From Macrostomum lignano (lineage: Eukaryota): a stretch of 64,000 bases of DNA. The translations under genes were made by a program, and so were the position numbers. The stretch is taken from contig NIVC01000591.1 in the NCBI GenBank assembly GCA_002269645.1, positions 62,001 to 126,000 on the forward strand, given 5' to 3'. Below are positions 8,091 through 63,640 of the stretch, one piece after another (the stretch's first letter is position 1; each line of letters opens with the position of its first letter). The notes under the pieces are model-generated. The model saw only the letters and a list, made by a program, of their open reading frames with translations, was not told where the DNA came from and did not search any database.

Positions 8091-8399
8091 ACGACCACTA
8101 CTAGAACAAAAATTATTCTATTATAATTGCACTGAAAATTTTACAAAAGCGGAATAGTGGCCGACTATTTGTTTGCGGACAGTGTTGGAACAAGTTTGGT
8201 CAGACAGAATAGTACAAATTAAGGGTATGACGAATATTTTCAGTGCATATTGTTACATTATTGGGGTTACTTCAGTATTACTCAAAAAGATTCTTAACAA
8301 CGTTGTGAGACCACGAAGTTACGAATAAAAAACCTATGGACACCATAAATCACAGCGTTTAACTTTTGCAAAAGGTCGCAAGCAAAATACCGAAATACC

Positions 8400-11300: not shown

Positions 11301-12668
11301 CAATAAGGCTCTGGCTCTGGCGACCTTCGTAGCCTTCGTCTGCAAAGCAGATACCGTGCCTTCCTTGGTTTGCCTGTCAACAGTGGAAGCCTCTGATGAA
11401 CTGGCTGCTTGAACTCCTGCTCCGAAAGCCGCTTCCTCTCTAACCAGGATTTCAAGTCCAAGACATTGAGGAATTCCTTGATCGAATCTAAGCCGTTCTC
11501 ATCCGTCACCTGTAGCTGACTGACACCATAGAAAGGCCGTAAGGCAACCATCCTGGCAGTTCTAAGCATCCCGAGACGGACCACTTCGTATGAAGCAACG
11601 TACACTCACCCCGAGATTCTCCAGGCTGCGGACATTGCCGTTGACTTGATCGTGGAAGTTTCTGAGTTGGTGGACTGAAGCACCTGAACAAGTCAGCGCC
11701 GAGAACTTCGCCAGATGCTCGCGCACGGCTCCACTCCGGGATCCAAACCGTCGTTGCAGGTTATCGATCTTGTCGATCTTATCGATCTTGTAGTTCTCGG
11801 CTGTGATTTTACGGCCGGCGATCGAATTCTTGGCTTCTCCTGAAAGGCACGATTGCAGGTAGCTAAACTTTTCGACGACGCTGAGGCTCGGGTTGTCGTG
11901 GATGCTGGAGCTGAAGCGGTCCCAGAATGCAGTCCATTGCGTCCAATCTCCATTGAATGCTGGCGGCGGCAGCCTAATGGCCGGCGTAGTCGTCAAAGCA
12001 GAATTCTCTCGCGGTGACGTGGATGGAGTTGACTTTTTCGTTTGCTGTTGATCTTTAGCCTGCATGCGGCTTTCTCGCTCGGCCTGAAGACTCTGCAGTC
12101 GCTTGGCAAGACTCGAAATCATCTTCCCAGCCAGTAGCTCTCACTCCATCGTCTTCTCCACTTACTCTTGGAGTATTTTCTCGTCGATCTCAACGGACAG
12201 CTCTTTATCCGCTGCCAGCAGCTGTTGCTTCTTGAGGCGCAGGGCTTCCAGTACGCTGTCGATGTCTTCCTCAGCAGCCCCTGAGTTGAGCAGGTCTTGG
12301 GCTTTCTGGGCTAATCTGGTGACCGTCGCTCTCAAAACTCCACGCTTTTTGGAGCCCATGCTGAACTGATAAGAAATCGGGTGAGTCACTGTAGAACTAT
12401 AGAGCCAATACTTTCACTTTACTTTGATTTTAGTTCGGGCGCCATGTTGTCTGAACAAGAAATTGAACAAGTCTGAGGGCCGTCAATTTAGCTAACAAGA
12501 AAAAATCAACAATTAAGCGCTTACTGAGAGGTCTGCAATACCTTGTAATACTGTATATTTAACTTAAGTCTCTCGCAACAACCACCCCACCATGCGCACT
12601 GAGGAGGGGGACACACAGCGTACACACAAACCAGAGGGTGCTTGGCAGGCACACAACTAACCCTAACA
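8400..12668 (-). mobile_element. Non-autonomous BEL/Pao LTR retrotransposon (RT and RNase H deleted, 3' LTR truncated)
   Basis: 5' LTR 12668-12445 (TGTTAGGG...AACA), PBS TGGCGCCCGAAC at 12444. Gag DUF1759-like (FNGDWTQWTAFWDRF), Cys-His knuckle (CFSCLSKGHATKTC), protease (ILFDSASNRSFI), integrase (LIRDAH, CVVCRR, LDYCGP, WQFITERAPWQG) and a DUF5641-like tail. PPT AGGGGGGAG then a 24-nt copy of the LTR start at 8423-8400. In-frame stops and frameshifts. Confidence 0.9.
9500..9691 (-). mobile_element. Solo LTR (192 bp) inserted in the BEL integrase
   Basis: TGTAAG...CTCACA termini on minus strand, 4-bp TSD GATC at 9496-9499 and 9692-9695, internal TATA-like run and AATAAA. Removing it restores integrase HLELVNDLTTETFL. 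Confidence 0.85.
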
Positions 12669-17677: not shown

Positions 17678-20374
17678 TCGTAGTGTGTCGCATGTGCCAT
17701 ACATTTTCTTCCTGCATTTCCTTGCCACCTCTCAGACTCTGTGTTTGTGACTACCTGTGCGGTCTCGCTCCCTTGTCCTATCGTAATTCCCTTACAATTT
17801 CCTTCTTTATCCCCCCTGTGACTATGCCTGCCTTCCACATGTCCTTTTCCTGCCTCCATTTAAAGTTCCTTCAACCAGGACGGGTGGTCTGTGGCTGCCA
17901 TTCAATCTTCCAATCTCGAAACCTACTCCTCCAGGTAAGCCTTCGGGAAAGTAAGACCGGATACTATACAAGCTACAATGCAAATCTTACCATCGAACTT
18001 GCTCCAGCACTTGTATCAGTAGCCTTCATGACGAGATGCTTTCATTCGTTTTCTGTGACTGTTAGTAAAAAACGACTTATAGGTGTTTTTAAATCGACGA
18101 GCCAAAGGCAGTTTTATTTAATTGACGCAGCAAGAGAATGTAGCTATTCCAAAGTAGCGAAATAAATAGGATTAAAGCTACATGCATGCATACTTGGTTT
18201 TTATTTACTTATAATAACAGTCACAGTGTTAGTGACATCTAACCTGAGTGTTGGGCGTTGGTCCAAAACTCTTGTACGTCTAAATTTCGTATTTTATTTG
18301 CATTTTCGCCCCCCCCCCCACGGAGTCAGTATAGCACCATAGCTTTCGCGTCCAATGCTTCGATACCATCAGTCCGAAATATGTTGGTTTAATTACGAGC
18401 GTACATATTAGCGATAAGCTGAGATAGCATAATTTCTGCGTGAAACAAAGATGTTACAGCATCCTCATTCCCCCACCCCGCGCTCCAACCAATAAAGCTA
18501 CATCCTACATCGGTTCTTAAAAGCGATGTAACATTCTAACAGGCGAGTTCGAGTCCAGTCGAACTGATTTATACTGAACCCTGGCAAAGTATGCTGTGGC
18601 AGTTAAATTATGATTGTGGATTGTCATTGTGCTTTTTATCTTCCATTGTCTCCTTCTCGCATGTTGACAATGAAAGTTAATTATTATAGTAATTACGCTT
18701 CGTATAAAGCCTTGAGCTCGAAGAGTTATAAAGAAATATATATAATAAACTAATTATGCTGTGCTGATGAAAATTTACGACGCATTAAGCCACTCGAGGG
18801 ATAATTTGTCAAAATTTCGTGGACCCGACGTAATTATGATGTTAGGAAACATTAAGGGATTCTGAGAAAGTCACCAAAGCATTCGCTGTGACACATCGAC
18901 GCTCTCCAGCAGTCTTCTGAACGCAAAATTATGGTTTCGGTCGAGAAGACTTCAGTAAATTAGGGCTTTTCGCGTTGTTCAAAACATTTTGGCATCACAC
19001 TGGACTGCAGTGCTAGGCGTTCTTTTTTGTAATAGACTTTAGGACAAAAATAAAACTTCGCGCTTGACTCAACCTTTCAGTAGAGTTTTACTGCGTTCTG
19101 TGCTGCTACTTTTGAAATGTGTCAACAAGTTAATTGGATAAACATTGATGGGTTTCGGCCTTTTCGGCTCCTTTCGGGAAGCTTTTGGGCCCCAGGTCTC
19201 AGAAATAAATCAATTAGAGTCCTGGCCCCCCACTCCTGTCAGATGGTCAGCCCCATGGTAGCTTGATAGGTGACGAGCAGTCTAGGTCCTATAGCTAAGA
19301 GAGGGACAGCGAGAGACAAGCAGGGAGAATTTTAAAGGTAGAGATCAGCTAATCCGCAGATTAACTAACCCGCTGCCACCAGCCCGTGTGTCCTGGCTCA
19401 CCAAACCGGGACTTTCGAAATCGGGCTTCCGACTAGAGGGGGCTTTGCACTTATCCATGCCAACTAGTGTCTTTTTGCTGTCTATCTCAAAGTCATAGCC
19501 GATGATAAGGTACACTGCTGTGACTTAATCGCATTGGCCATGCAGGTACAGAGGGGACTTTTGCAGGGGATTCTTGCGGTGGCGAGTCTATGGGGTAGCT
19601 ACATGTACTATTACATTGCTAAATACGAAGAATTTTACTTTTGGCCTTCAACGCGCCAACTAGCCTCTCATAGCGCTGATGATAGGCTAACTCGAACATC
19701 AGAGACCGCATGATTCATTACCCGAGCCGCTTGGCGAACCTAGAGTGCACTATTATTTTGCATTATTGGCAATTTTTCTCACTGATTTGACAGATTGATC
19801 GACTGAGAACTGTCTTGCCATTGGTCCACTGTGACCGGCGCCTACTAGCTTAGCTACTCATCTGAGCTATCGGCGAACAAAGAAATAAAACCGATAGAAA
19901 TAACTGTCAGATTTAACCTTCTCACTGATTCACTTCACACCTCAGATTTAATTGGAGTTTCAGACTACTAACAGTATTATTAAGTGATTTCTGCCTCAGT
20001 AACAGCACTACTGAACAAAATGAGCAAAAGTGTGCGCCTAATCCAGCTACTGAAATAGGTGAAAGATAAGGGATCACCCAATCAAGCAAGTCTAGGTAGC
20101 CTCTAACCCAACCAATCAGAAACTCAACAGCCGGAGACCAGGTAATCCACAGTGACCGAATCGGCTTAGTGCTTCGCAGCTGTAGACCCGGGATGATGTT
20201 GATGTCACAACCTTCGCAGATAGCTAGCAGGTGATGTTCTAATCTTGATGTTCGCTGCTGACGACCGGGGGGATTCGTCCTTAATGATGATGGGGGAGTC
20301 GCGATCCGGGGATCAAGAGACGACGGTCGCGTGTAGCAGCCGGGTGTCAGGTGACAAGTGACCGGCCAAGTTGA

Positions 20375-27478: not shown

Positions 27479-28405
27479 AGATTGGAGAATGTTAAATGAG
27501 AAATTGTAGTCCAACGGCCCTTTTGCGGGACCACTTTAAACTGACAACGTCAGACATACCATGATATATGTGGTATATACACAATTGGACGAGTTAGGTG
27601 TGCTGCAGTTAACGTGTGCTTTTATGTACATTAAATCGTAAATATGTACACGTACAGGTGTATTACAAAGAATCATGCACGGACCACTATAGGTAACCGT
27701 TGTACAACGGTGTGGTCCTTGCAAAGAACTAGCTCTTACATATATATGTAACTTTTATAATTTGCTCCTGCGTCCATAACTGTTAAAAATACATGCAAAT
27801 TCAAATTCGGTGAATTACGGTCATCCATTTCTCAAAAGAGGATCAAAATAACGAAAAGTTAAATGCAAAATGCATAATGATCTGTATTATGTCATGTACA
27901 CATACATGTAAAGAACTTCGTTTTATAATATCTTTAAAGTATGACTTTACGCAAAGACATCACTGCAGTTCAGATAAGCAATTTTGTTTCTAGTTGGCAC
28001 AAAAATAGACAGCATTGTTTGATACAACTTGCTTTTTTATTGTTTTGTACATTTATGGTATAAAATTTCTTACGGTTTGCAAATAAAATGTAAGTTCGGG
28101 TTTTAATAACGGTTTTAACAACATGTTTTACAACATATAAAAAAAGATTTTAAAACTGTACTATTTAGCCTGTAGACAATAAAGATTTTGTTTTTATTTT
28201 AATTATTATGAATATATTATTTTAATTAAAATTAAAAAAAGTAATATAAAAGCGTCAAACTGGCACGTGTCGCGAAGCCAGCCGCCGCTTCCGACTGTTG
28301 TTGTTAGCCCGCCTGTCGCCCGATAACAATTCTAACAGCAGTCCTGTCTGTTTGTAACCGGCTCAGTCTCACCGTCTGGAAAAAGCTTTATAACTATATT
28401 AAATA

Positions 28406-40574
<12,169 letters not shown>

Positions 40575-44864: not shown

Positions 44865-46036
44865 ATGCAAGTCGCCAGTAAAGAGGCCGCTGTGAGATGC
44901 GCCGAAGAACTGCTCATGTCGCTGCACAATCCGTCAACGAGGGATTCGGCTCTGGCTGAGCTGAGCAAGCATCGCGACGCCATACCGGAATTGGCCTGTC
45001 TGATCTGGCAGTCTTATGGCTGCGTTGCCATTCTGTTAGAAGAGATCGTGTCCGCGTATCAGCATCTCAGCACTGGGGCATTGTCGGTAAGTTTGTGTTG
45101 CCTTGATTCTTGATCTACCGATATGCATCAAAAACTTGTCGGTCAGTGTGTGTTTTTATGTTGCTTTGGTTCATGATCTACCGATATGTATCGAAAAAAA
45201 ATTGGTGAGTGTGTGTTCTTGTGTTGCTTTGGTTTATGATCTACCGATATGTATCGAAAACTTGTCGGTGAGTGTGTGTTTTTATGTTGCTTTGGTTCAT
45301 GATCTACCGATATGTATCGAAAACTTGTCGGGGAGTGTGTTTTTCTGTTGCTTTGGTTCGTGAATTACCGATATGTATCGAAAAATTGTCGATGAGTGTG
45401 TTTTTGTGTTGCTTTGGTTCATGATCTACCGATATGTATCGAAAAAATTGTCGGTGAGTGTGTGTTTTTTGTGTTGCTTTATTTCTTGATATACCGATAT
45501 GTATCGAAAAAACGTAATTAATTTAACAATTTGGTAAATTTGTACTAATGTAGTAGATGCATTTACAGTGTTTGAAACTAGTTTTATTGATACATTCACT
45601 TAGATTAGGTTAGTTTAGTTAAAGTTCGCGAAGAGCAATTAGTCTGCTGCACTCTTGTTTTATAGAAGCAACGCTGCTTAACCGTCTCAAAGCATTTAGT
45701 TTGATGAAGCGTCTTTGCGCCTGTCACTCGATCACTGATAAAAGTGCATTCACAGCTGTGTCTCTTTAACCCCCTCCCTCCCGCATGCCTGAGCGGCCTC
45801 CTTGCCTATGGAGCCGACTAGCGGAGCAGTGAGGCCTTCTCTAATTAAAGCTAAGGGTTTGCTGTTTGGGTTGTGATGCACAAATCCTGCCCAGTTGGAG
45901 ATTGTGCCGGCGTGTGGATGGGACTGGTTATTGGGGACTGAGCTGCTCCACTGCGTCTCATTTCTTCTTGATTAACGCTTGTGTCAGTCCGGCATCTGTG
46001 TGCCTGCTTCTCTGCCTGTCTGCGTCTGTCTGTTCA

Positions 46037-46109
<73 letters not shown>

Positions 46110-46146
46110 GTCTATCTGTCTGTCTGTCTGTCTGTCTGTCTGTTCA

Positions 46147-46197
<51 letters not shown>

Positions 46198-46205
46198 GTC
46201 TGTTC

Positions 46206-46247
<42 letters not shown>

Positions 46248-46284
46248 GTCTATCTGTCTGTCTGTCTGTCTGTCTGTCTGTTCA

Positions 46285-46325
<41 letters not shown>

Positions 46326-46362
46326 GTCTATCTGTCTGTCTGTCTGTCTATCTGTCTGTTCA

Positions 46363-46427
<65 letters not shown>

Positions 46428-46430
46428 TCA

Positions 46431-46515
<85 letters not shown>

Positions 46516-46552
46516 GTCTATCTGTCTGTCTGTCTGTCTATCTGTCTGTTCA

Positions 46553-46593
<41 letters not shown>

Positions 46594-46630
46594 GTCTATC
46601 TGTCTGTCTGTCTGTCTATCTGTCTGTTCA

Positions 46631-46711
<81 letters not shown>

Positions 46712-46766
46712 ATATCTATCTATCTGTCTATCTCTATCTATCTATCTATCTATCTATCTGTCTATC

Positions 46767-46817
<51 letters not shown>

Positions 46818-46984
46818 GTCTATCTCTATCTATCTATCTATCTATCTGTCTATCTATCTATCTGTCTATCTCTATCTATCTATCTGTCTATCTATCTATC
46901 TGTCTATCTCTATCTATCTATCTGTCTATCTATCTATCTATCTATCTGTCTATCTATCTATATATCTATCTGTCTATCTATCTG

Positions 46985-47051
<67 letters not shown>

Positions 47052-50000
47052 GTCTATCTATCTATATATCTATCTGTCTATCTATCTGTCTATCTATCTG
47101 TCTATCTATCTATTTCCCTAATCTAAGTTGTTGTATTTTAGCACACCAAAGTGCTTTAAGTACTTCTATAGTTCGTATGGGCCATCTCTAATTGCCCATG
47201 CACTTTAAGCACTCTTTTCACCTCTTTTTGATCGCTTCTTTGTTAAGTTCGTTTTAGATGTATTAATAAAGGTAACTTCGCTCAGTTAATTGCTTTCCCT
47301 GCTCAGTCCAGGGGCCGAAATTTTTTAGCACGAAATTGCGTGACCGTCATGACTCTGGTCATCTGGTTCAGAGCTTCAAAGGTCTTCGTTTTCCTTGACT
47401 ATCCTCATGCACAGTCATTTTCCTTTGTGAGACTCGTTTTTATCGTCCTTGAGTATCTAAATTTTTTGGATAGTTTCCCAATCATCAGTGTTTTATTATC
47501 CTCGAGTTCTCCCAGTTATGAATTATCACTAGTTATGAATTGAATTATGCCTAGTCATGAATTATCCCTACTTATGAATTATCCCTACTTATGAATTATC
47601 CCTACTTATGAATCATCCCTAGTCATGAATTATCCCTACTTGTGAATTATCCCTACTTATAAATTATCCCTACTATGAATTATCCCACTTATGAATTATC
47701 CCTACTTATGAATTATCCCTACTCATGAATTATCCCTACTATGAATTATCCCACTTATGAATTATCCCTACCTATGAATTATCCCTACTTATGAATTATC
47801 CCTACTTATGAATTATCCCTACTTATGAATTATCCCTACTATGAATTATCCCTAACATGAATTATCCCACTTATGAATTATCCCTACTTATGAATTATCC
47901 CTACTTATGAATTATCCCTACTTATGAATTATCCCTACTATGAATTATCCCTACTATGAATTATCCCTACCTATGAATTATCCCTACTTATGAATTATCC
48001 CTACTTATGAATTATCCCTACTATGAATTATCCCTAACATGAATTATCCCACTTATGAATTATCCCTACTTATGAATTATCCCTACTATGAATTATCCCT
48101 ACTATGAATTATCCCTACCTATGAATTATCCCTACTTATGAATTATCCCTACTTATGAATTATCCCTACTATGAATTATCCCTAATATGAATTATCCCAC
48201 TTATTAATTATCCCTACTATGAATTATCCCACTTATGAATTATCCCTACTTATGAATTATCCCTACTATGAATTATCCCACTTATGAATTATCCCTACTT
48301 ATGAATTATCCCACTTATGAATTATCCCACTTATGAATTATCCCACTTATGAATTATCCCTACTTATGAATTATCCCTACTTATGAATTATCCCTACTAT
48401 GAATTATCTACACTTCTGAACTACCCCATATTTCTTACTGCTTATATTATTCTAATTTTTCCAACACACATGGCAGTGTTGTCTTTAATTTATTTTCCCA
48501 ATCCTGATTCCCGCTCCCCTTCCCACCTGTGACAGGTGCAGCTATCAAATCGGGTATGCAACGCCATGGCCCTGCTGCAGTGTCTGGCTGCACACCCAGC
48601 CACTAGGCGGGCTGTGTTGGACCTGCAGCTGGTGCACTACCTGTTCCCGTTCCTAAGCAACCATCCTCAGCATCAGCCGGCAGATCCTCGCCCAGCTGAG
48701 TTCCTTCGCCTCACAGCTTTGGGTGTTATTGGCGCTTTGGCGAAGTCCGAAGATCCTCAGGCTGTTGAATGCCTTCTACGAACCGAACAGCTGGTGCCGC
48801 TGTGCCTTCGCGTGATGGACTTTGGCAGCGAGCTGAGCCGCACTGTGGCCACTTTTGTAGTGCAGAAGGTGCTGCAGGATCCCGCTGGGCTGGCCTACGT
48901 GTGCAACACCTATCAGAGGTTTGAGCAGGTTGCCGCGGGTCTGGCTGGCGTTCTGGTGTACTTGCGAGTGAACCCGAGCGCCCGACTATTGAAGCACGTT
49001 GTTCGATGCTATGTGCTGCTGACTGATAACTTCAGGTAGGGGTTCACTCGTTTTTATTAGTAGCTTTTATTACTCAGTTAAACCATTGGCTTTTAAATCC
49101 ATGGGACTTAAAATGTATGTGAAAATTGGCCTTCAAATTCTTAAGGAAAATCGGCCTTCAAATTCTTAAGGAAAATCGGCCTTCAAATTCTTAAGGAAAA
49201 TCGGCCTTCAAATTCTTAAGGAAAATCGGCCTTCAAATTCTTAAGGAAAATCGGCCTTCAAATTCTTAAGAAAAATCGGCCTTCAAATTCTTAAGGAAAA
49301 TCGGCCTTCAAATTCTTAAGGAAAATCGGCCTTCAAATTCTTAAGGAAAATCGGCCTTCAAATTCTTAAGGAAAATCGGCCTTCAAATTCTTAAGGAAAA
49401 TCGGCCTTCAAATTCTTAAGGAAAATCGGCCTTCAAATTCTTAAAGAAAATCGGCCTTCAAATTCTTAAGGAAAATCGGCCTTTAAATTCTTAAAGAAAA
49501 TCGGCCTTCAAATTCTTAAAGAAAATCGGCCTTCAAATTCTTAAAGAAAATCGGCCTTCAAATTCTTAAAGAAAATCGGCCTTCAAATTCTTAAGGAAAA
49601 TCGGCCTTCAAATTCTTAAGGAAAATCGGCCTTCAAATTCTTAAGGAAAATCGGCCTTCAAATTCTTAAAGAAAATCGGCCTTCAAATTCTTAAGGAAAA
49701 TCGGCCTTTAAATTCTTAAAGAAAATCGGCCTTCAAATTCTTAAAGAAAATCGGCCTTCAAATTCTTAAAGAAAATCGGCCTTCAAATTCTTAAAGAAAA
49801 TCGGCCTTCAAATTCTTAAGGAAAATCGGCCTTTAAATTCTTAAAGAAAATCGGCCTTCAAATTCTTAAAGAAAATCGGCCTTCAAATTCTTAAAGAAAA
49901 TCGGCCTTCAAATTCTTAAGGAAAATCGGCCTTCAAATTCTTAAGGAAAATCGGCCTTCAAATTCTTAAGGAAAATCGGCCTTCAAATTCTTAAAGAAAA

Positions 50001-54084: not shown

Positions 54085-55065
54085 TCAGTCACCCTTAAAT
54101 CTCACTAAGATTAAAGAATCTCCTTTAGATCTCACTAAGAGTCACCTTTAGATTTCACTAGGATCTCCCTTAGATCTCACTAAGGTTCTCCCTTAGATCT
54201 CTCTAAGAATCTCCCTTAGATCTCACTAAGGTTCTCCCTTAGATCTCACTAAGGTTCTCCCTTAGATCTCTCTAAGAATCTCCCTTAGATCTCACTAAGG
54301 TTCTCCCTTAGATCTCTCTAAGAATCTCCCTTAGATCTCTCTAAGAATCTCCCTTAGATCTCTCTAAGAATCTCCCTTAGATCTCACTAAGGTTCTCCCT
54401 TAGATCTCACTAAGGTTCTCCCTTAGATCTCTCTAAGAATCTCCCTTAGATCTCACTAAGGTTCTCCCTTAGATCTCTCTAAGAATCTCCCTTAGATCTC
54501 ACTAAGGTTCTCCCTTAGATCTCTCTAAGAATCTCCCTTAGATCTCACTAAGGTTCTCCCTTAGATCTCTCTAAGAATCTCCCTTAGATCTCACTAAGGT
54601 TCTCCCTTAGATCTCTCTTAGAATCTCCCTTAGATCTCACTAAGGTTCTCCCTTAGATCTCTCTAAGAATCTCCCTTAGATCTCACTAAGGTTCTCCCTT
54701 AGATCTCTATAAGAATCTCCCTTAGATCTCACTAAGGTTCTCCCTTAGATCTCTCTAAGAATCTCCCTTAGATCTCACTAAGGTTCTCCCTTAGATCTCC
54801 CTTAGATCTCACTAAGGTTCTCCCTTAGATCTTTCTAAGAATCTCCCTTAGATCTCACTAAGGTTCTCCCTTAGATCTTTCTAAGAATCTCCCTTAGATC
54901 TCATTAGGAGTCTCCTTTAAATCTCACTAGGATCTCTCTTAGATCTTACTGAGAATCTCCTTAGATCTCACTGAGAAGCTCCCATAGATCTCACTAAGGC
55001 TCTCCCTTAGATCTCACTAAAAATATCCTTTAGATCTCAATAGGAATCTCCTTTAGATTTCAATG
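54085..55065. repeat. 23-nt minisatellite in USP 5'-UTR intron
   Basis: TTAGATCTCACTAAGGTTCTCCC alternating with TTAGATCTCTCTAAGAATCTCCC. Confidence 0.95.
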
Positions 55066-55360
55066 AGAATCGCCCTTGAATCTCACTGAGAATCGCCTTT
55101 GGATCTCACTGAGAATCGTTCTAGAATCTCCTAAAGAACCGCCCTTGAATCTCACTGAGAATCGCCTTTGGATCTCACTGAGAATCGTTCTAGAATCTCC
55201 TAAAGAACCGCCCTTGAATCTCACTGAGAATCGCCTTTGGATCTCACTGAGAATCGTTCTAGAATCTCCTAAAGAACCGCCCTTGAATCTCACTGAGAAT
55301 CGCCTTTGGATCTCACTGAGAATCGTTCTAGAATCTCCTAAAGAACCGCCCTTGAATCTG
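55066..55360. repeat. 69-nt x4 higher-order repeat in USP 5'-UTR intron
   Basis: Exact 69-nt period built from three ~23-nt submonomers. Confidence 0.92.
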
Positions 55361-55914
55361 ACGATTAGAATCGGTAGACAACTAGTAAACTGAGTATTTA
55401 AAAGTACTTTTTGCACTGAATAGAATGCAAAAGTTGTCACTTACGAGGCTTCAGTGTGCGATGATTTTCAAAAACTTTGAGGACAAACAAAGGCTGCCTT
55501 GAAGTGTGCTGCGATCTCTACTGTACTCGAGATACAGTCCTTAGGAATCTCCCAAGCTCGAGCCTTCTCAAATATATTAGCTTACTGTTCAGTCGGCGTC
55601 TTGTGAGTTCATCCGCGAATAGGAAGAAGTCCAACTGTAAGCGGAGAGGGAGTGAAGGGAAGGAGAGCCTGGAATCCCGAGCCTTTATCCCTCCGTTTCC
55701 TCGCCACTGCCGGTTCGTGAAAGATTTTTTCGTTGATAGGGAAACTTGCACAAAAATAGGAAATTGAGTTGCGTGTCAAGGATTTATCGGCATTATTATC
55801 CTATTATACTGGCTGGGGGATGCAGAGCGTTTCTAGGGAGATAAATGAGTATTTAATGCATATCTAAAGTACATTCTGAAAGAAAAAACTTGTCATAACG
55901 AGTGGAATCCAGTT

Positions 55915-56780
55915 TTAGCATCACTAATCCCGTTTAGGTGTCACTAATCCCATTGTGGTGTTACTAATCACGTTTCGGCGTCACTAATCCTATTGTGGTG
56001 TCACTAATCCCATTTTGGTATCACTAATCCCATTGTGGTGTCACTAATCACGTTTCGGCGTCACTAATCCTATTGTGGTGTCACTAATCCCATTTTGGTA
56101 TCACTAATCCCATTGTGGTGTCACTAATCACGTTTCGGCGTCACTAATCCTATTGTGGTGTCACTAATCCCATTTTGGTATCACTAATCCCATTGTGGTG
56201 TCACTAATCACGTTTCGGCGTCACTAATCCTATTGTGGTGTCACTAATCCCATTTTGGTATCACTAATCCCATTGTGGTGTCACTAATCACGTTTCGGCG
56301 TCACTAATCCTATTGTGGTGTCACTAATCCCATTTTGGTATCACTAATCCCATTGTGGTGTCTCTAATCACGTTTCGGCGTCACTAATCCTATTGTGGTG
56401 TCACTAATCCCATTTTGGTATCACTAATCCCATTGTGGTGTCACTAATCACGTTTCGGCGTCACTAATCCTATTGTGGTGTCACTAATCCCATTTTGGTA
56501 TCACTAATCCCATTGTGGTGTCACTAATCACGTTTCGGCGTCACTAATCCTATTGTGGTGTCACTAATCCCATTTTGGTATCACTAATCCCATTGTGGTG
56601 TCACTAACCACGTTTCGGCGTCACTAATCCTATTGTGGTGTCACTAATCCCATTTTGGTATCACTAATCCCATTGTGGTGTCACTAATCCAATTGTGGTG
56701 TCACTAATCCCATTGTGGTGTCACTAATCCAATTGTGGTGTAACTTATCCCATTTGGCGTCACTAATTCAGTTTTAGTAT
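55915..56780. repeat. 20-nt minisatellite with 80-nt higher-order period
   Basis: TCACTAATC + four variant tails in fixed order (ACGTTTCGGCG, CTATTGTGGTG, CCATTTTGGTA, CCATTGTGGTG). Confidence 0.95.
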
Positions 56781-57394
56781 CACTTTCGAATTCTGTTGTC
56801 ATTAATTAATTTATTATACCACTAATCCCTTTCAGCACAAACAAATCTAGTTTTTGTTCCAATAATCAACCTTTTACGTCATTAATGTGCGTTATTAAGA
56901 GTTTCATTGTGCCAAAACATTACTTAAGAGTTTCGCATTATTTCATAATATGCAACACCTGTTGCGCAAAAGTACAACTGCAGAGATCCATTGGACCATG
57001 TTAACCTTTGCAATAACAATCGGACCACTTCTGCATTGTACAAAAGCTATTAAAAACTTAGACGATTTGGTCCAATGGAATTTTACCCTGGGAACTTGAC
57101 AGCGGCAAGTTCAAAGGCAAACTATTGAGATAATTGGCTCTCACCAGAGTGAATTGCACTTTAGCTGAACGCGGCTCGTTGCAATCATAATTTGATAGTT
57201 GACATGGCCCCACATTTTCATTTTAAAAATAGGACCGTTATGAATTTTTACTGTATTTTTTAGGACAGATTGTACTCAGGCAGTTGCTGATGGACTGGGC
57301 GCTTTCGTTGTGTCAAACTCTTAGTCAGGATGGCAGAATTCTTACCACATAACTCAGTCACTCACCCAGCCTTTCACTCATTCACAACTCACTC

Positions 57395-57915
57395 GTGACC
57401 TCATTCATAAACTCAACTCACTTATCAATTCACTCATCAATTCCCTCGCCAATTCACTCATCAATTCACTCACCAACTCACTCACCAATTCACTTACTAG
57501 TTCACTCATTAATTCCCTTATCAATTCACTCATCAATTCCCTCGCCAATTCACTCACCAATTCACTCATCAATTCACTCATCAATTCAGTCATCAATTCA
57601 CTCATTAATTCACTCATTAATTCACTCATTAATTCACTCATCAATTCACTTACCAATTCACTCATCGATTCGCTCACCAATTCACTCATCAATTCACTCA
57701 TCAATTCACTCATCGATTCGCTCACCAATTCACTCATTAGTTCACTCATTAATTCACTCATCAATTCAGTCATTCATTCACTCATCGATTCGCTCACCAA
57801 TTCACTCCTCAGTTCACTCATCAACTCACTCACCAATTCACTCATCAACTCACTCACCAATTCACTCACAGATTTACTCACTGATTTACTCATCAATTCA
57901 CTCATCAATTCACTT
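57395..57915. repeat. 12-nt minisatellite
   Basis: AATTCACTCATC / AATTCACTCACC copies. Confidence 0.92.
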
Positions 57916-58213
57916 ATTTTCGTTCATAAACTCATTATTCATACTTGTGAAAATTAATAACCTAAAATTTGATTCTTCTACGCAAATTTTTCATCTGTGA
58001 TACTAGTAAGCTACTGACCAAGAATTTGATGCATCATAAGAATATTGCCGTCTAAAAATGAAAAAAGCAGACAACAGTAAGTAAAATCTCTTTTTATTTT
58101 TCTTTTCTGCTATTAGTAGTATATTTCCACAACAATTTCGTTAAGTGTCCTTAAAAGCTCAGCACCGAAAATCTTGAACTCGGAATCAAGTTGTGAGTAA
58201 CAGATCCAGCTTC

Positions 58214-58513
58214 TCAAACTGGAATCTTGTTCTCAGACCACGGGTGCATCTCGATGTGTCCGTCCTCTGCCTCGACCAGACTCATCGGGTTTGTGTCCGG
58301 CATCATCTCGATGTGTCCGTCAATTTGCAGCAGCTTATCCAGGGTGTCCGGATCGATGTCCCAGTCTTCGTCAATCTCGTCCAGCTGGTAGTGCACTTTC
58401 TCGCCGTCAACCACGGACTCGACGAAGTCTCCGGGATGGACACCCTGGCGGGGGTTGGCGGCTGCGGCAACAGCCACCAGCAGAGCGAATAGCAGAGCAC
58501 AGAATTTGGCCAT
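58214..58513 (-). CDS. Orphan small acidic secreted protein (99 aa)
   Basis: MAKFCALLFALLVAVAAAA signal peptide, Asp/Glu-rich body, internal repeat DGHIEM x2, gene-like codon usage. Acceptor at 58528 and donor at 59125 flank a minisatellite-filled 5'-UTR intron. Confidence 0.75.
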   Translation of the reverse strand: MAKFCALLFALLVAVAAAANPRQGVHPGDFVESVVDGEKVHYQLDEIDEDWDIDPDTLDKLLQIDGHIEMMPDTNPMSLVEAEDGHIEMHPWSENKIPV

Positions 58514-58564
58514 TTTCTTGCTGTCTTCTGGAAGCAGGAATTGGAAATATTGTTTCCATTGTAA

Positions 58565-59065
58565 GGTCACACTATGGGACTGAGTGAGGTCACTCTATCA
58601 GACTGAGTGAGGTCACCCAGCTCTATCAGACTAAGTGAGGTCACTCTATGAGACTGAATGAGGTCACTCTATGAGACTAAATAAGGTCACTCTATGAGAC
58701 CGAGTGAGGTCAATCTATGGGACTGAGTGAGGTCACTCAATGAGACTGAGTGAGGTCACTCTATGAGACTGAATGAGGCCACTCTATGAGACTAAATGAG
58801 GTCACTCTATGAGAATAAGTATGGACACTCTATGAGACTTAGTGAGATCAATCTATGGAACTTAATGAGGTCACTCTATGAGACTGAGTGAGGTCACTCT
58901 TTAAGACTAAGTGAGGTCACTCTATCAGACTGAATGAGGTCACTATCAGACTGAATGAGGTCACTATCAGACTGAGTGAGGTCACCCAGCTCTATCAGAC
59001 TAAGTGAGTTCACTCTATGAGACTAAGTGAGGTCACTCTATCAGACTGAGTGAGGTCACTCCAAT
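58565..59065. repeat. 23-nt minisatellite in 5'-UTR intron of the orphan peptide gene
   Basis: GAGACTGAGTGAGGTCACTCTAT copies. Confidence 0.93.
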
Positions 59066-59657: not shown

Positions 59658-61876
59658 ATGAAATTTCTGAGCATTCTGGCGCTCCTGGTGCTGGCGACCG
59701 CCGTTCTCGGCGCCCGCCTTCCCGAGACCTCGGCCGTGGCGCGGACGTTCTCCGACGATGAGAACGAGTCGCTGAACCAGTACATCAAGGCTCTGCTGGA
59801 GAACCTCAAGGAGGAGATGCCGAACGGCATTCCAGACCTCAACATCCCGCCGCTGGAGCCGCTGCACCTGCCGGAGATCTACGCCGACATTGAGGAGGGC
59901 ATGGCCAAGGTGCGCCTGCACATGCTGGACCTGCTGATCGAGGGCCTGTCCGGATTTGTTGTCCGCGAGGTCAAAGGCGACCTGAACACCATGAGCTTCT
60001 CCTTGGACCTGTTCCTGCCCGAGATCACCGGCCAGAGCTACTACGATATGGATGTGAGTTGGCTAGCGCGCTCTGCAGCTACTGCTAGTAGCTTAGTGGC
60101 GAATGTTGGAACTGTTTTTTAAACGCGACCGCGATTCCACCCAGCTGTGAGCTTGTAGTTTCCTGACTCATTGCTCTGAGGCATATAATGAGTTTATAAG
60201 GTCCGTAATAACCTGAGGGTGTTCGTTAGTTACTTACTGACTCAGCTCCTGACTCAGCTCCTGACTCAACTCCTGACTCAGCTCCTGACTCAGCTCCTGA
60301 CTCAGCTCCTGACTCAACTCCTGACTCAGCTCCTGACTCAGCTCCTGACTCAGCTCCTGACTCAACTCCTGACTCAGCTCCTGACTCAGCTCCTGACTCA
60401 GCTCCTGACTCAACTCCTGACTCAGCTCCTGACTCAGCTCCTGACTCAGCTCCTGACTCAACTCCTGACTCAGCTCCTGACTCAGCTCCTGACTCAGCTC
60501 CTGAGTAAGTTAATGAGTAAGTTCCTGAGAAAGTTAATGAGTAAGTTCCTGAGTAAGTTAATGAGTAAGTTCCTGAGTAAGTTTAATGAGTAAGTTCCTG
60601 AGTAAGTTAATGAGTAAGTTCCTGAGTAAGTTAATGAGTAAGTTCCTGAGTAAGTTAATGAGTAAGTTCCTGAGAAAGTTAATGAGTAAGTTTCTGAGAA
60701 AGTTAATGAGTAAGTTCCTGAGTAAGTTTATTAGTAAGTTAATGAGTAAGGTAATGAGTAAGGTAATGAGTAAGGTAATGAGTAAGGTAATGAGTAAGCT
60801 CCTGAGGGACTTCATGAGTGAGTTTATGCGCAGCTCTAAACGCTCCCTATTTAAAAGCATTTTCTGAATCTCAACGCATCGCGGATTTCCAGGGCAAGGT
60901 GCTCATTTTCCCGCTGTACGGCCGCGGTATGGCCGGCCTGAAGGTGAACGATCTGCACTTCAAAGGCACCGCCCGCATCGTCATCAAGGATATGGAGAGC
61001 ATCCAGCTGGATCACTTCAACATCCACGTCGAGTTCTCGCAGATCCAAATCTACCTGGAGAACATCGTCGGCGGCGGTAACCTTGGCAACGTGGTGAACA
61101 CCCTGCTGAACATGCTGGGCAAGCTGCTATACGACAAGTTCCGGGACCAGATCCTGCCTCCGCTGAACAACATCATCAAGAACGCGCTGAACGAGCAGCT
61201 GGCCAAGATCAAGCTGTCCGACCTCATCGGAGGCATCGGCCGGGCGCCCCGCAGCCGCTTCAGCGTGTCCCCGGTCCAGGACTCCGTCAACACTTACGTC
61301 GACATGCTGATGGAGAACCTGCGCCCCTTCATGCGCGACAACGGCATGGACCCGCTGAGCCTGCCGAACCTGTCCACCAGCTTCTCCAAGAAGATCTGGT
61401 TCGTCACCTGGCGCGGAGGTGCCAGCATTAGCCAGGGCCAGCTGCGCAGCCTCTCCAGCATCCACCGCACCGGCAACTTCGGCTTGGACCAGTCGGGCAA
61501 CCGCCTCACCATTGACGGCTCCGTGGGAGTGAACCAGCTGTGGGGCAGCTTCAGGGCCCTTGCCTGGTTCATGTCCATCCGCATCTCTGCCGGCATCCAG
61601 CTGACCGTCCAGCGGATTCGAGTTCGCGCCCGCCTGCACGCCGACGTCAGCGACCTGAAGGCGGTGCTGGACCTCTTCAAAATCTCCGAGATCTCCAACA
61701 TCGGCGTGAAGGTCAGCGGCCTGGGCCCTCTGAACTGGATTCTGGGCCCCATCGCCACTCTGGTTGTCAACGGAGTTCGCGGCAAAATTGCCCAGGCCAT
61801 TGAGAGCCCGGTGAAGGCGAAGGTTAACGAGTTGCTACAGAACCTGCAGATGCCCAACTTCAGCCAGATGCACTGA
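59658..61876 (+). CDS. Secreted two-domain TULIP lipid-binding protein: JHBP/takeout domain + group 7 allergen (Der p 7-like) domain, 459 aa
   Basis: Exons 59658-60053 and 60893-61876 (phase 0, GT-AG). Signal peptide; JHBP-type GIPDLNIPPLEPL, YDMDGKVLIFPLYGRG, LENIVGGGNLGNVVNTLLN; second domain VNTYVDMLMENLRP...DPLSLP, SFSKKIW...GQLRSLSSIHRTG, VSGLGPLNWIL. AATAAA at 61956. Family call is from recalled motifs, not a search. Confidence 0.82.
60232..60815. repeat. Two adjoining 12-nt minisatellites in the JHBP-like gene intron
   Basis: GACTCAGCTCCT copies to ~60505, then GAGTAAGTT(CCT/AAT) and GAGTAAGGTAAT copies. Confidence 0.95.
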
Positions 61877-62289
61877 GCCAGTTCGAGTTGAGAGAGACAC
61901 AAGCAGGATATTAACTAACTGTGTGCTTCTGTGCACTTTTGAGTTTGAATTATGAAATAAACAAATTATAAGCTATGCTCATGTTGTTACATTATTGATT
62001 GTTTATCAAGGGCAAAGTAAAGCTAAGAAGTTTTGTTGTGGCGTTAGCCGCAAAGCAAAATTACTCCCAATACTCAGGCAGTGACTCCAGACGCAGCAGG
62101 GGTGGGTCGAAATCCTGGGATTGTAGGAAAGTTCCGTTTTAAATTAAACTGAATATCGTACTTAGCATCCTCACAGATATTTGTTAGATTTCACTTGCAC
62201 TGTCTAGACTTGATATCACATTGCCAACATAATTCCACAACCTATATCTCCCAATGGGAGTTCAGCTCCCAATTCCCATACCCTTCGCA

Positions 62290-62520
62290 TTCCATGCATC
62301 TCCCTGCATCCCCCTGCATCTCCTTGCATCCCATGCATCCCCATGCATCCCCCTGCATCTCCCTGCATCCCATGCTTCTCCGTGCATCTCCATGCATCCC
62401 CCTGCATCTCCCTGCATCCCATGCTTCTCCTTGCATCTCCATGCATCCCCCTGCATCTCCCTGCATCCCATGCTTCTCCGTGCATCTCCTTGCATCTCCA
62501 TGCATCTCCCTGCATTTCCC
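62290..62520. repeat. CCCTGCATC/CCATGCATC minisatellite
   Basis: Direct reading of tandem copies. Confidence 0.9.
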
Positions 62521-63124
62521 TACATCTTCTTCAACTAATTCCCCCAAGAATCTCCCTGATCCCTCTTCGTCCACGCATCTTCATACATCCATGCCTATCC
62601 CCATCCCTCTTTGAGTGAGAGATTCGAATACCTGTCTCTGAGAAGTCAAACCAATTCATGCCATTTTGCAGCCCTGACCCCCGATAACGTTGCTGACCCA
62701 AAGGCTGCTTAAGCCAATTGTCACGCAAGCCCAGTTACTGAGGTCAAGTTTGACTTTCATCTCAGGTTGTGAAGCTGTCTGCTTAACAGCCTGAGTACCG
62801 ATTGCTGCCCAGTAATTAGCAGTTAATTTCTGTAGCGCAGTCTTGGCAACCGGAGAACCGCAATGTTTAACTTTCTAACTACTGACAAATTGGAGTAGTA
62901 TGCGATAACCGGCCACTGATTTGTTTATTTTTACACACACGTCCGAACTTCTGAAATATAATAATAGAACTAATTAGGCGACAATGCCTGAGGTGAACTG
63001 GTCTCGTATTCACTGCAGACTGAACCCGTTGTGAGGCCTTCCGGTTAGCTTGTTGGTGTTGGTTACATGTGACTGCGGCTGGCTGCTTGTGGAGTTCAAT
63101 GGTTTACAGATTTGAAGGGCCTGG

Positions 63125-63385
63125 TGGGGAGATGCGTGAGATAGAGGGTGGGAGATGTGGGATAGAGGGTGGGAGATGTGGGATAGAGGGTGGGAGATGT
63201 GGGATAGAGGGTGGGAGATGTGGGATAGAGGGTGGGAAATGTGGGATCGAGGGTGGGAGATGTGGGATAGAGGGTAGGAGATGTGGGATCGAGGGGCGAG
63301 ATGTGGGATCGAGGGTGGGAGATGTGGGATCGAGGGTGGGAGATGTGGGATCGAGGGGCGAGATGTGGGATCGAGGGTTGGAGAT
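63125..63385. repeat. 21-nt G-rich minisatellite
   Basis: GGGAT(A/C)GAGGGTGGGAGATGT copies. Confidence 0.93.
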
Positions 63386-63640
63386 CTGAGTTAGAGGGTG
63401 TAAAATTATTATAGAATACAACACAGTACAATTTAATACAAGTCGTATAAGAAACGTTTTAATGTATTTTAATGCGGTTATCAGAATTAAACCAAATGTA
63501 AAATGTAAAAACATTGCTCACTTTTAACCACCAATCTGCGAGATCGACTCTCTGTACCTTTCCCTCCTGTTAATTCCCTTCTGCAAGCAGCAACTGCTGC
63601 TAATTCCCTCAGACCCCAACTGCTATTCCATCCGGTACAG

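What the first reader, a model, noticed from the sequence alone, without database searches (positions are those of the whole stretch)
59658..61876. Arthropod-type JHBP/takeout + Der p 7 double-domain gene in an apparently non-arthropod genome
Seen: intact secreted two-domain protein, 6 kb from a USP gene, with a host-style minisatellite intron, so it is integrated rather than a loose contaminant. GC3 is about 90% in the first ~100 codons of exon 2 versus about 60% in MCM7 exon 2 (hand count). An RAPR/RSR basic linker lies between the domains. Known: JHBP/takeout and group 7 allergen families are characteristic of arthropods, whereas USPs are reported largely absent there. Inference: horizontal transfer from an arthropod, or an unrecognised ancient lineage of these lipid carriers; the linker may be convertase-cleaved. 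High GC3 could equally reflect high expression.
Basis: partly seen in the sequence, partly recalled or inferred. Interest (0 to 1): 0.7.

Follow-up and report, generated by a model that had tools for sequence, protein, structure and literature searches.

The report
Flatworm two-domain takeout/Der p 7 lipid carrier
A flatworm (Macrostomum lignano) carries a real, intact gene for a secreted two-barrel lipid-carrier protein of a type that the literature calls arthropod-only, and because its closest relatives include arrow-worm (chaetognath) proteins, it is more likely an old, patchily kept animal gene than one transferred from an arthropod.

Summary
Window 59658-61876 (+) encodes an intact 459-aa secreted protein in two exons. 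They are split by an 839-bp GT-AG intron filled with 12/24-bp minisatellites. Pfam finds a JHBP/takeout domain (E 9e-47) followed by a group-7-allergen domain (E 4e-27).

The host is the flatworm Macrostomum lignano. The locus, including the USP neighbour, is collinear with two other long-read contigs. A 46% paralogue and transcripts from related species exist, so the gene is integrated and old.

The two-domain architecture is not unusual. It occurs in chelicerates, crustaceans and insects.

The nearest relatives are not arthropods. They are environmental transcripts at 39-41% identity, against 30% or less for arthropods. One of these transcripts begins with the chaetognath spliced leader (21/21 nt). 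Neighbour-joining bootstraps separate the flatworm-plus-chaetognath group from all named arthropods at 61-74%.

Best reading: an old protostome two-TULIP extracellular lipid carrier that has been retained patchily, not a recent arthropod transfer. Ancient transfer is not excluded.

GC3 of 0.89 is high but continuous with the neighbours (0.56-0.81), and it is 0.94 in the orthologue, so it reflects host codon bias. The RAPR linker motif is not conserved.

The parts
59658..60053 (+). Exon 1: start codon, signal peptide (about residues 1-18, 59658-59711) and the first half of the N-terminal TULIP (JHBP/takeout-like) domain
   Evidence: The NCBI model of the 99% identical copy splices at the same codon.
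60054..60892 (+). Single phase-0 GT-AG intron, mostly two minisatellites (12-mer CTGACTCAGCTC at 60237-60504; 24-mer at 60499-60798)
   Evidence: The intron is 677 bp in the L001 copy, so its length varies with the repeats.
60893..61876 (+). Exon 2: rest of the N-domain (to residue 244, nt 61228), linker, C-terminal TULIP (Grp7/Der p 7-like) domain and stop codon
   Evidence: The orthologous cDNA L003 reads through the junction without a gap.
61229..61285 (+). Inter-domain linker (residues 245-263) with RAPRSR at 61241-61258. The model is low-confidence here and the motif is not conserved.
61286..61831 (+). C-terminal TULIP domain (Grp7_allergen, residues 264-445)
61956..61961 (+). AATAAA polyadenylation signal 80 nt after the stop codon
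58214..58516 (-). Divergently oriented small acidic secreted ORF. It is the conserved upstream neighbour of the gene in all three M. lignano copies. Listed as context, not as part of the protein.
   Evidence: no Pfam hit

Best explanation
This is a genuine, resident gene of the flatworm Macrostomum lignano. It encodes a secreted, cysteine-free protein made of two homologous tubular lipid-binding (TULIP) barrels: a takeout/JHBP-like barrel, a roughly 15-residue flexible linker, and a Der p 7-like barrel. This is the same 'pseudodimer' layout as BPI/LBP and as the JHBP+Grp7 proteins of arthropods. Shown: the gene model, both domains, the fold, homology between the two halves, integration in the genome, paralogues, and the taxonomic spread. 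Inferred: each barrel shields a hydrophobic ligand (lipid, sterol, isoprenoid, carotenoid or microbial lipid) and carries it through extracellular fluid, as takeout, JHBP, crustacean MF-binding protein, Der p 7 and BPI/LBP do; and the strong GC3 codon bias suggests high expression. On origin, the gene most likely descends from an old protostome two-TULIP gene that survives in arthropods, chaetognaths and macrostomid flatworms and was lost, or diverged beyond recognition, elsewhere. The 'arthropod-specific' label would then be a sampling artefact.
For: Domains: and all 36 two-domain relatives hit both Pfam models. PDB sequence hits are Der p 7 (2e-12) and Takeout 1 (2.4e-12). The AF2 model has pLDDT 85.5 and shows two helix-plus-superroll barrels. 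Foldseek gives Der f 7 at 2.7e-12 (TMt 0.78) and Takeout 1 at 3.7e-12, plus BPI and LBP aligned over about 500 columns at prob 1.0. The N and C halves are homologous (hhalign 98.9%, E 3.6e-17).

Residency: the protein is 99% identical to an M. lignano protein on a 190-kb contig. Window 51.2-64 kb, including the USP gene, is collinear with two contigs at 88-96%. There are 7 synonymous and 3 non-synonymous differences from L001 (dN/dS 0.13). A paralogue group sits at 46%, and there are cDNAs from other species at 77%.

Spread: 3062 HMMER hits. Every named two-domain hit is an arthropod: ostracods, Limulus, pseudoscorpion, mite, spider, sea spider, crab, crayfish, barnacle, mantis shrimp and cockroach. 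The closest hits are unnamed environmental transcripts (39-41% identity against 30% or less). The transcript for P0009 starts with the last 21 nt of chaetognath spliced leader SL2.0, whereas the longest chance match in the window is 11 nt.

Bootstraps: Macrostomum clade 99-100%; Macrostomum plus P0007/8 87-93%; flatworm+chaetognath group against all named arthropods 61-74%.

Literature: Drosophila CG3246 is a two-TULIP protein and is essential (10.64898/2026.06.25.734463). Shrimp has three JHBP+Grp7 genes and an MF-binding JHBP homologue (PMC12256323).
Against: No ligand, tissue or expression level was measured, so the function rests on family analogy. The inter-domain packing is uncertain (pTM 0.52; TM to BPI only 0.24). 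The bipartition separating arthropods from the flatworm+chaetognath group has only moderate support. It comes mainly from the N-domain: the C-domain alone does not recover it. The deeper branching is a star (13-19%). The trees are neighbour-joining on corrected p-distances, not likelihood. Only one member of the environmental clade is tied to a taxon. The P0007/8 sister group and clade Y remain unidentified and could be arthropods. Vertical descent requires many losses: oyster and leech lack the domain according to PMC12256323, and no named spiralian other than M. lignano appeared among about 30 labelled hits.
Confidence: 0.65

Rival explanations
1. Ancient horizontal transfer: an ancestor of Macrostomum acquired a two-domain JHBP+Grp7 gene from an aquatic arthropod (or exchanged it with chaetognaths). 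The gene then gained an intron and host codon usage, and duplicated.
For: All named homologues other than M. lignano are arthropods. A published 22-genome survey found the JHBP domain only in arthropods (PMC12256323). The distribution in Spiralia looks very patchy. The intron position is not shared with the mite orthologue, which is compatible with later intron gain. The deep branches are unresolved, so nesting within arthropods cannot be excluded.
Against: No donor-like sequence exists: identity to any arthropod is 30% or less, while a chaetognath-containing clade is at 39-41%. The flatworm group falls outside all named arthropods in 61-74% of bootstraps. A second non-arthropod phylum carries the gene as its own trans-spliced mRNA, so a single transfer into flatworms no longer explains the distribution. 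There is no compositional anomaly beyond host codon bias. From general knowledge, animal-to-animal transfer of nuclear coding genes is rare.
Confidence: 0.15
2. The protein is a precursor. A furin-type convertase cuts the RAPR|S linker and releases a free takeout-like carrier and a free Der p 7-like carrier.
For: A minimal R-X-X-R motif (RAPR, residues 249-252) lies in an exposed, low-pLDDT linker between the barrels. Single-domain takeout and group-7 proteins work on their own in arthropods.
Against: The motif is missing from the 77% orthologue (ISHPPATPFS) and from all paralogues and sister sequences (LPYSS, LPFGH, LPKNS, LPTFS). P2 is Pro, not Lys/Arg. The two-domain layout is conserved full-length across about 60 relatives, as expected for a working pseudodimer such as BPI.
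Confidence: 0.08
3. Its main job is innate immune recognition, as for BPI/LBP and as proposed for Der p 7: it binds bacterial lipids (LPS, lipopeptides) at epithelial surfaces rather than carrying endogenous or dietary lipids.
For: The two-barrel layout is collinear with BPI and LBP. 8 of 36 relatives give weak LBP_BPI_CETP N-domain hits (best E 1.3e-5). UniRef labels the paralogue 'BPI2 domain-containing'. Der p 7 binds a bacterial lipopeptide, as reported in PMC5507252.
Against: This protein itself has no BPI-family Pfam hit at E<=1. The TM-score to BPI is 0.24. The closest characterised relatives (takeout, JHBP, MF-binding protein, beta-carotene-binding protein 9ink) carry small isoprenoids (PMC12256323). 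There are no induction or binding data.
Confidence: 0.2
4. Contaminant or assembly artefact: arthropod DNA was mis-joined to flatworm sequence.
For: None beyond the unexpected taxonomy of the Pfam families.
Against: The same gene with the same neighbours (small secreted ORF, USP) occurs in the window and in two independent long-read contigs of GCA_002269645.1. The intron carries the same kind of minisatellite as the rest of the window. Paralogues and orthologous cDNAs exist. No arthropod sequence exceeds 30% identity.
Confidence: 0.01

Closest known systems
Arthropod two-domain JHBP+Grp7 proteins (e.g. Scylla paramamosain 'juvenile hormone binding protein 4', three Litopenaeus vannamei genes; uncharacterised proteins of Limulus, spider, mite, cockroach). 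Drosophila CG3246 and Bombyx JHBPd4/a1 are described only as two-TULIP pseudodimers.
   Same: Same length (about 430-480 aa), signal peptide, and domain order (JHBP then Grp7_allergen). The alignment is full-length and collinear, and both Pfam models are hit in all 36 proteins tested.
   Different: Only 22-30% identity. The host phylum differs. The protein has no cysteine. The intron position differs from the mite gene.
Single-domain takeout / haemolymph JHBP / crustacean methyl-farnesoate-binding protein
   Same: The N-domain matches Pfam JHBP over the whole profile, PDB Takeout 1 at 2.4e-12 and the Takeout 1 fold. These are secreted hydrophobic-ligand carriers.
   Different: This protein has a second barrel. 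It lacks the N-terminal disulphide pair that is described as typical of takeout proteins (PMC5496735). JH itself is not known in flatworms (general knowledge).
Group 7 mite allergens Der p 7 / Der f 7
   Same: The C-domain matches Pfam Grp7_allergen (E 4e-27) and Der p 7 / Der f 7 by sequence (2e-12, 2e-10) and by fold (TMt 0.76-0.78).
   Different: The allergens are free single barrels. Here the barrel is the C-terminal half of a fusion. Identity is 12-14% in the structural alignment.
Vertebrate BPI / LBP / CETP / PLTP (double-TULIP pseudodimers)
   Same: Secreted; two homologous TULIP barrels in tandem; collinear Foldseek alignment over about 500 columns at prob 1.0; internal homology of the two halves.
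   Different: There is no Pfam LBP_BPI_CETP hit for this protein. The whole-chain TM is 0.24 and the modelled inter-domain geometry is uncertain (pTM 0.52). It has no conserved disulphide.
Chaetognath transcripts of clade X (P0009 and relatives, environmental metatranscriptomes)
   Same: Closest non-Macrostomum sequences (39-41% identity) with the same two-domain layout. They group with the flatworm proteins.
   Different: These are unannotated transcripts. The taxon is proven for one contig only, through its spliced leader. No genomic structure is known.

Membership tests
Pfam JHBP (PF06585; takeout/JHBP family) | Score above the curated gathering threshold over most of the profile | tested here: met
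   159.7 bits against 29.2, profile positions 3-238 of 239
Pfam JHBP (PF06585; takeout/JHBP family) | TULIP fold (long helix wrapped by a super-rolled beta sheet) like Takeout 1 / JHBP | tested here: met
   AF2 pLDDT 85.5. Foldseek: 3e8t E 3.7e-12, TMt 0.65; 9ink, 2rck and 3aos also hit
Pfam JHBP (PF06585; takeout/JHBP family) | N-terminal pair of cysteines (disulphide) described for takeout proteins | tested here: not met
   The protein has 0 cysteines, and most two-domain relatives also lack a conserved N-terminal pair. The feature is as stated in PMC5496735.
Pfam JHBP (PF06585; takeout/JHBP family) | Restriction to Arthropoda (as stated in the literature) | tested here: not met
   The host is Macrostomum lignano, and a chaetognath mRNA also encodes a member. 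The literature claim is in PMC12256323 and PMC5507252.
Pfam JHBP (PF06585; takeout/JHBP family) | Binds JH, MF or another isoprenoid | not testable with these tools
   Needs recombinant protein and ligand assays
Pfam Grp7_allergen (PF16984; Der p 7 family) | Score above the gathering threshold and a Der p 7-like fold | tested here: met
   95.9 bits against 21, profile positions 2-178 of 180. PDB 3h4z 2e-12. Foldseek 9hae_C 2.7e-12, TMt 0.78
Two-domain JHBP+Grp7 'pseudodimer' subfamily | Signal peptide, then JHBP domain, short linker and Grp7 domain in one chain of about 430-480 aa, alignable end to end | tested here: met
   About 60 full-length relatives.
Two-domain JHBP+Grp7 'pseudodimer' subfamily | Head-to-head packing of the two barrels | tested here: inconclusive
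   pTM 0.52, low-confidence linker, whole-chain TM to BPI 0.24
BPI/LBP/CETP family (PF01273 + PF02886) | Significant match to the LBP_BPI_CETP N- and C-domain models | tested here: not met
   No hit at E<=1 for this protein. Only weak N-domain hits in 8 of 36 relatives (best 1.3e-5). It works like the family but is not filed as a member.
Proprotein-convertase substrate | Conserved R-X-[K/R]-R or R-X-X-R site in an exposed linker | tested here: not met
   RAPR is present only in the M. lignano g1-type copies. It is absent in the orthologue and paralogues.

The most novel reading that the evidence does not exclude
The gene entered the macrostomid lineage by ancient animal-to-animal horizontal transfer of a two-TULIP lipid carrier (from an aquatic arthropod, or between chaetognaths and flatworms). 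It was then domesticated, gaining an intron and host codon bias, and duplicated.
Probability: 0.15. Interest if true: 0.8.

Novelty: new member of a known kind. Interest (0 to 1): 0.45.

Why it matters
Reviews and a 2025 cross-genome survey describe takeout/JHBP and group-7-allergen domains as arthropod inventions. An intact, duplicated, constrained two-domain member in a flatworm, together with a trans-spliced chaetognath mRNA for a close relative, pushes the family back to at least early protostomes. It also suggests that the double-barrel form is the ancestral state, and that free takeout/JHBP and Der p 7 proteins were derived from it. The double-barrel form is the arthropod counterpart of BPI/LBP and is essential in Drosophila as CG3246. 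Macrostomum lignano is transgenic- and RNAi-tractable, so it offers a non-arthropod setting with no juvenile hormone in which to ask what these carriers originally bound. The finding also gives a concrete case for checking 'lineage-specific' domain claims against unannotated transcriptomes.

Tried and rejected
- **Profile search with 36 relatives.** The word-indexed search returned only 7 hits and no new taxa, so one search was wasted.
- **Metagenome contig scan.** It returned only the contig already held.
- **Calanoid copepod spliced leader (PMC4664967).** None of the five environmental 5' ends matched it, so 'clade A = calanoid copepods' gained no support.
- **SRA accession numbers.** SRR13614415 was not found in any paper. 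SRA numbers alone did not identify organisms; they only showed that X- and Y-clade contigs come from neighbouring runs (SRR17229686 and SRR17229378).
- **Literature links.** Searches pairing Macrostomum with JHBP or takeout found nothing. The pairing with HGT found only unrelated papers.
- **Intron position as a shared character.** The only arthropod genomic copy available (mite) has its single intron elsewhere. This is uninformative rather than decisive.
- **P0003 (g2 copy) as evidence on linker conservation.** Rejected, because its differences come from a 1-bp deletion in a C4 run that shifts the frame.
- **C-domain-only tree.** It does not recover the flatworm+chaetognath bipartition, so I do not claim strong phylogenetic resolution.
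- **GC3 as a foreign signature.** Rejected.
Full report
**What is at the coordinates**

The + strand between 59658 and 61876 holds a two-exon gene.
- Exon 1 is 59658-60053 (132 codons, donor GAT|GTGAGT).
- Exon 2 is 60893-61876 (acceptor TTCCAG|GGC, 327 codons plus stop).
- They join in phase 0 to give an uninterrupted 459-residue protein.
- An AATAAA lies 80 nt after the stop codon.
- The 839-bp intron is mostly two minisatellites: a 12-mer array at 60237-60504 and a 24-mer array at 60499-60798. Arrays of the same kind flank the gene (56501-56767, 57413-57914, 58564-59061, 62287-62527, 63127-63400).

Pfam places a JHBP/takeout domain at residues 9-244 (E 9.1e-47, 159.7 bits against a cut-off of 29.2, nearly the whole profile). 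It places a Grp7_allergen domain at 264-445 (E 4e-27, 95.9 bits against 21). The N-terminus (MK, a 15-residue hydrophobic run, then G-A) reads as a signal peptide. That is from the sequence; no predictor was available. The protein contains no cysteine.

**Host and integration**

- The protein is 99% identical to BOX15_Mlig021288g1 of the free-living flatworm Macrostomum lignano, on a 190-kb contig. It differs at three residues, all in the signal peptide.
- Window 51.2-64 kb is collinear at 88-96% identity with two separate long-read contigs, NIVC01002236.1 and NIVC01003036.1. This stretch includes the USP gene, a small acidic secreted ORF at 58214-58516 (minus strand) and the TULIP gene. The differences lie mainly in repeat lengths.
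- Against the first contig the coding sequence shows 7 synonymous and 3 non-synonymous changes (dN/dS about 0.13, few sites).
- The second contig has a 1-bp deletion in a C4 run in the linker. This is either a pseudogenised homeologue or a consensus error.
- Contamination or mis-assembly is excluded.

**The family within Macrostomum**

A second M. lignano group (UniRef A0A1I8J6J4, 'BPI2 domain-containing') is 46% identical. Transcript contigs from other sequencing runs encode a 77% orthologue (SRR13614415) and 46%-level relatives of the paralogue (SRR30276804/815, SRR14039612). That these come from congeners is my inference from the tree: the clade has 99-100% bootstrap. The orthologous cDNA reads straight through the exon junction, which supports the splice model.

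**Fold**

- An AlphaFold2 model built on 36 relatives has mean pLDDT 85.5. It shows two units, each an N-terminal helix, a long super-rolled antiparallel sheet and a long C-terminal helix. They are joined by a low-confidence linker at 252-257.
- Foldseek against the PDB returns Der f 7 (2.7e-12, TMt 0.78), Takeout 1 (3.7e-12), Der p 7, the locust beta-carotene-binding takeout protein and JHBPs as single-barrel matches.
- It also returns BPI (1ewf) and LBP (4m4d) as collinear matches of about 500 columns at probability 1.0, but with whole-chain TM of only 0.24.
- pTM is 0.52, so the barrels are well modelled and their mutual packing is not.
- Sequence search of the PDB agrees: Der p 7 at 2e-12 for the C half and Takeout 1 at 2.4e-12 for the N half.
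- The two halves are homologous to each other (hhalign 98.9%, E 3.6e-17).

**How common the architecture is**

A filter-only HMMER search of 1.84 billion cluster representatives gave 3062 hits, 131 of them below 1e-30. About 60 are full-length N+C proteins of 430-480 aa. Every one that carries a name is an arthropod:
- ostracods Notodromas and Darwinula
- Limulus
- a pseudoscorpion
- the mite Dinothrombium
- the spider Larinioides
- a sea spider
- Scylla ('JHBP 4')
- Procambarus
- Pollicipes
- Oratosquilla
- Periplaneta

All 36 two-domain proteins tested hit both Pfam models, and 8 also give weak LBP_BPI_CETP N-domain hits. The literature agrees that the layout exists in arthropods:
- Three Litopenaeus vannamei genes combine JHBP and Grp7 (PMC12256323).
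- Drosophila CG3246 is the fly's only double-TULIP protein and is lethal when deleted. Bombyx has two double-TULIP proteins (bioRxiv 10.64898/2026.06.25.734463).

So the double domain is a known arthropod protein type. What is unusual is the host.

**Is it arthropod-derived?**

The published view is that the domain is arthropod-only. A 22-genome survey found it 'only in Arthropoda', not in oyster, leech, nematode or deuterostomes (PMC12256323). A TULIP review calls JHBP, takeout and Der p 7 'the arthropod family' (PMC5507252). No paper in the library links Macrostomum with JHBP or takeout.

Against a recent transfer:
- The best identity to any named arthropod is 30% or less.
- The family had already duplicated to 46% identity within the flatworm lineage.
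- The mite orthologue's single intron sits elsewhere: phase 1 after codon 20, against phase 0 after codon 132 here.
- GC3 of 0.88-0.89 is at the top of a continuous host range. Neighbours are 0.56-0.81, with USP at 0.81 and one MCM7 exon at 0.80. It is 0.94 in the 77% orthologue, so it is a lineage-conserved codon bias and not a foreign signature.

**The nearest relatives**

The sequences closest to the Macrostomum proteins (39-41% identity, in both domains) are unnamed transcripts from environmental metatranscriptomes, Logan assemblies and the Tara catalogue. They fall into three groups: P0007/8, X (P0009 and a dozen relatives) and Y (P0015 and relatives).

I tried to identify them.
- None carries the calanoid copepod spliced leader (PMC4664967).
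- The JGI contig encoding P0009 (Ga0307385_10030567) begins with AGTAGTTTCAATTTGTTTAAA. This is the exact last 21 nt of the chaetognath spliced leader SL2.0, GGAAGCTTATAATTGAGTAGTTTCAATTTGTTTAAA (PMC2481426, Table 3).
- The independent Logan contig shows 17 nt of it directly after an adapter remnant.
- The longest chance suffix match in the whole 64-kb window, both strands, is 11 nt.
- A spliced leader at the exact 5' end marks the mRNA as the chaetognath's own.

Group X therefore contains at least one chaetognath gene. Arrow worms are non-arthropod protostomes that recent phylogenomics places with gnathiferan spiralians. That placement is my knowledge (Marletaz et al. 2019) and was not checked here.

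**Phylogeny**

The trees are neighbour-joining on gamma-corrected distances from 397 trimmed columns, with 200-500 bootstraps. No likelihood software was available.
- The Macrostomum clade has 99-100% support.
- Macrostomum plus P0007/8 has 65-77% with 71 taxa and 87-93% with 27 taxa.
- The group of Macrostomum, P0007/8, X and Y is set apart from all ten named arthropods in 61-74% of replicates.
- Its sister among arthropods is unresolved (13-19%).
- The N-domain alone supports Macrostomum+P0007/8+X at 84%. The C-domain alone does not recover the bipartition, although by identity its nearest neighbours are the same groups.

The flatworm genes therefore do not nest in crustaceans or chelicerates. 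They sit with a chaetognath-containing clade, which is what a species-tree-like history would give. Support is moderate, and the identity of P0007/8 and Y is open.

**Best explanation and how it works**

I read this as a resident, expressed M. lignano gene for a secreted double-TULIP carrier.

Shown: the gene model, both domains, the fold, homology between the two halves, integration, paralogy and the taxonomic spread.

Inferred from the characterised relatives:
- Each barrel encloses a hydrophobic ligand and ferries it through extracellular fluid or presents it to cells. The characterised relatives are takeout-ubiquinone, JHBP-JH, shrimp MF-binding protein, locust beta-carotene-binding protein, Der p 7-lipopeptide and BPI/LBP-phospholipid/LPS.
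- The strong codon bias suggests high expression.

On origin I favour vertical descent from an early protostome double-TULIP gene with widespread loss or divergence. I cannot exclude an ancient inter-phylum transfer (about 0.15).

The convertase idea is weak. RAPR|S is a minimal R-X-X-R site with Pro at P2. It is replaced by HPPATP in the orthologue and by unrelated residues in all paralogues and sister sequences.

**Comparison with the known, and novelty**

The protein passes the Pfam membership tests for JHBP and Grp7_allergen. It has the layout of the arthropod JHBP+Grp7 subfamily. It fails the takeout N-terminal disulphide feature and the supposed arthropod restriction. It works like BPI/LBP but is not a sequence member of that family (no Pfam hit at E<=1).

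The protein is already in public databases as an automatically named hypothetical protein, so the sequence itself is not new. What is new relative to the literature I could search is the reading: the family is not arthropod-specific, it occurs in a flatworm and in chaetognaths as the double-barrel form, and the flatworm copies are old. I rate it a new member of a known kind, of moderate interest.

Noticed in passing
window 58214-58516 (-); L001 8633-8932; L004 3461-3760: A small secreted ORF rich in Asp/Glu (MAKFCALLFALLVAVAAAANP...) lies head-to-head with the TULIP gene, about 1.1 kb away, in all three M. lignano copies. It has no Pfam hit. It may share a divergent promoter with the TULIP gene.
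   Followed up: partly
L004 about 6317 (NIVC01003036.1), equivalent to window 61246-61249: The g2 copy has a 1-bp deletion in a CCCC run inside the linker codons. This shifts the frame, and NCBI annotates a 295-aa partial protein. It is either a pseudogenised homeologue or a long-read consensus error.
   Followed up: partly
L008 1-21 and L007 8-24: An environmental metatranscriptome contig starts with the exact 3' 21 nt of the chaetognath spliced leader SL2.0. Spliced-leader tags can assign unlabelled metatranscriptome contigs to a phylum.
   Followed up: yes
L002 9-23 and L006 9-20: The 5' UTRs of two environmental relatives that share only 46% protein identity carry the same ACTG(C)AGATAAGT motif, which contains a GATA-factor-like AGATAAG, just upstream of the ATG. 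The window has TGATAA at about 59521 upstream of the flatworm gene. Its significance was not tested.
   Followed up: no
window 37537-38742, 45866-47191, 55060-55440, 56501-59061, 62287-63400: Minisatellite arrays of 10-24-bp units are very dense, including inside MCM7 and CNOT9 introns. They create long spurious ORFs in several frames.
   Followed up: partly
window about 4580-12122 (-): Retrotransposon remnants: gag-like zinc knuckle, protease/RT-like ORFs and an integrase C-terminal DUF5641 (E 3.4e-7). This looks like a BEL/Pao-type LTR element.
   Followed up: partly
window 15335-17728 (-): An intronless 797-aa neprilysin-like M13 peptidase ORF (Peptidase_M13_N plus Peptidase_M13) with low GC3 (0.56) compared with its neighbours.
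   Followed up: partly
window 28001-34000: A 6-kb AT-rich block (GC 0.26-0.32) lies immediately upstream of MCM7, against 0.40-0.55 elsewhere.
   Followed up: no
P0010 (Notodromas, 907 aa), P0019 (935 aa), P0017 (Darwinula, 833 aa): Some relatives have more than two barrels: N+C+C+C in an ostracod and four N-type barrels in P0019. Tandem TULIP arrays therefore exist beyond the pseudodimer, unless these are fused gene models.
   Followed up: no
window 1813-2799 (-): A 328-aa ORF with a signal-peptide-like start and no Pfam match.
   Followed up: no
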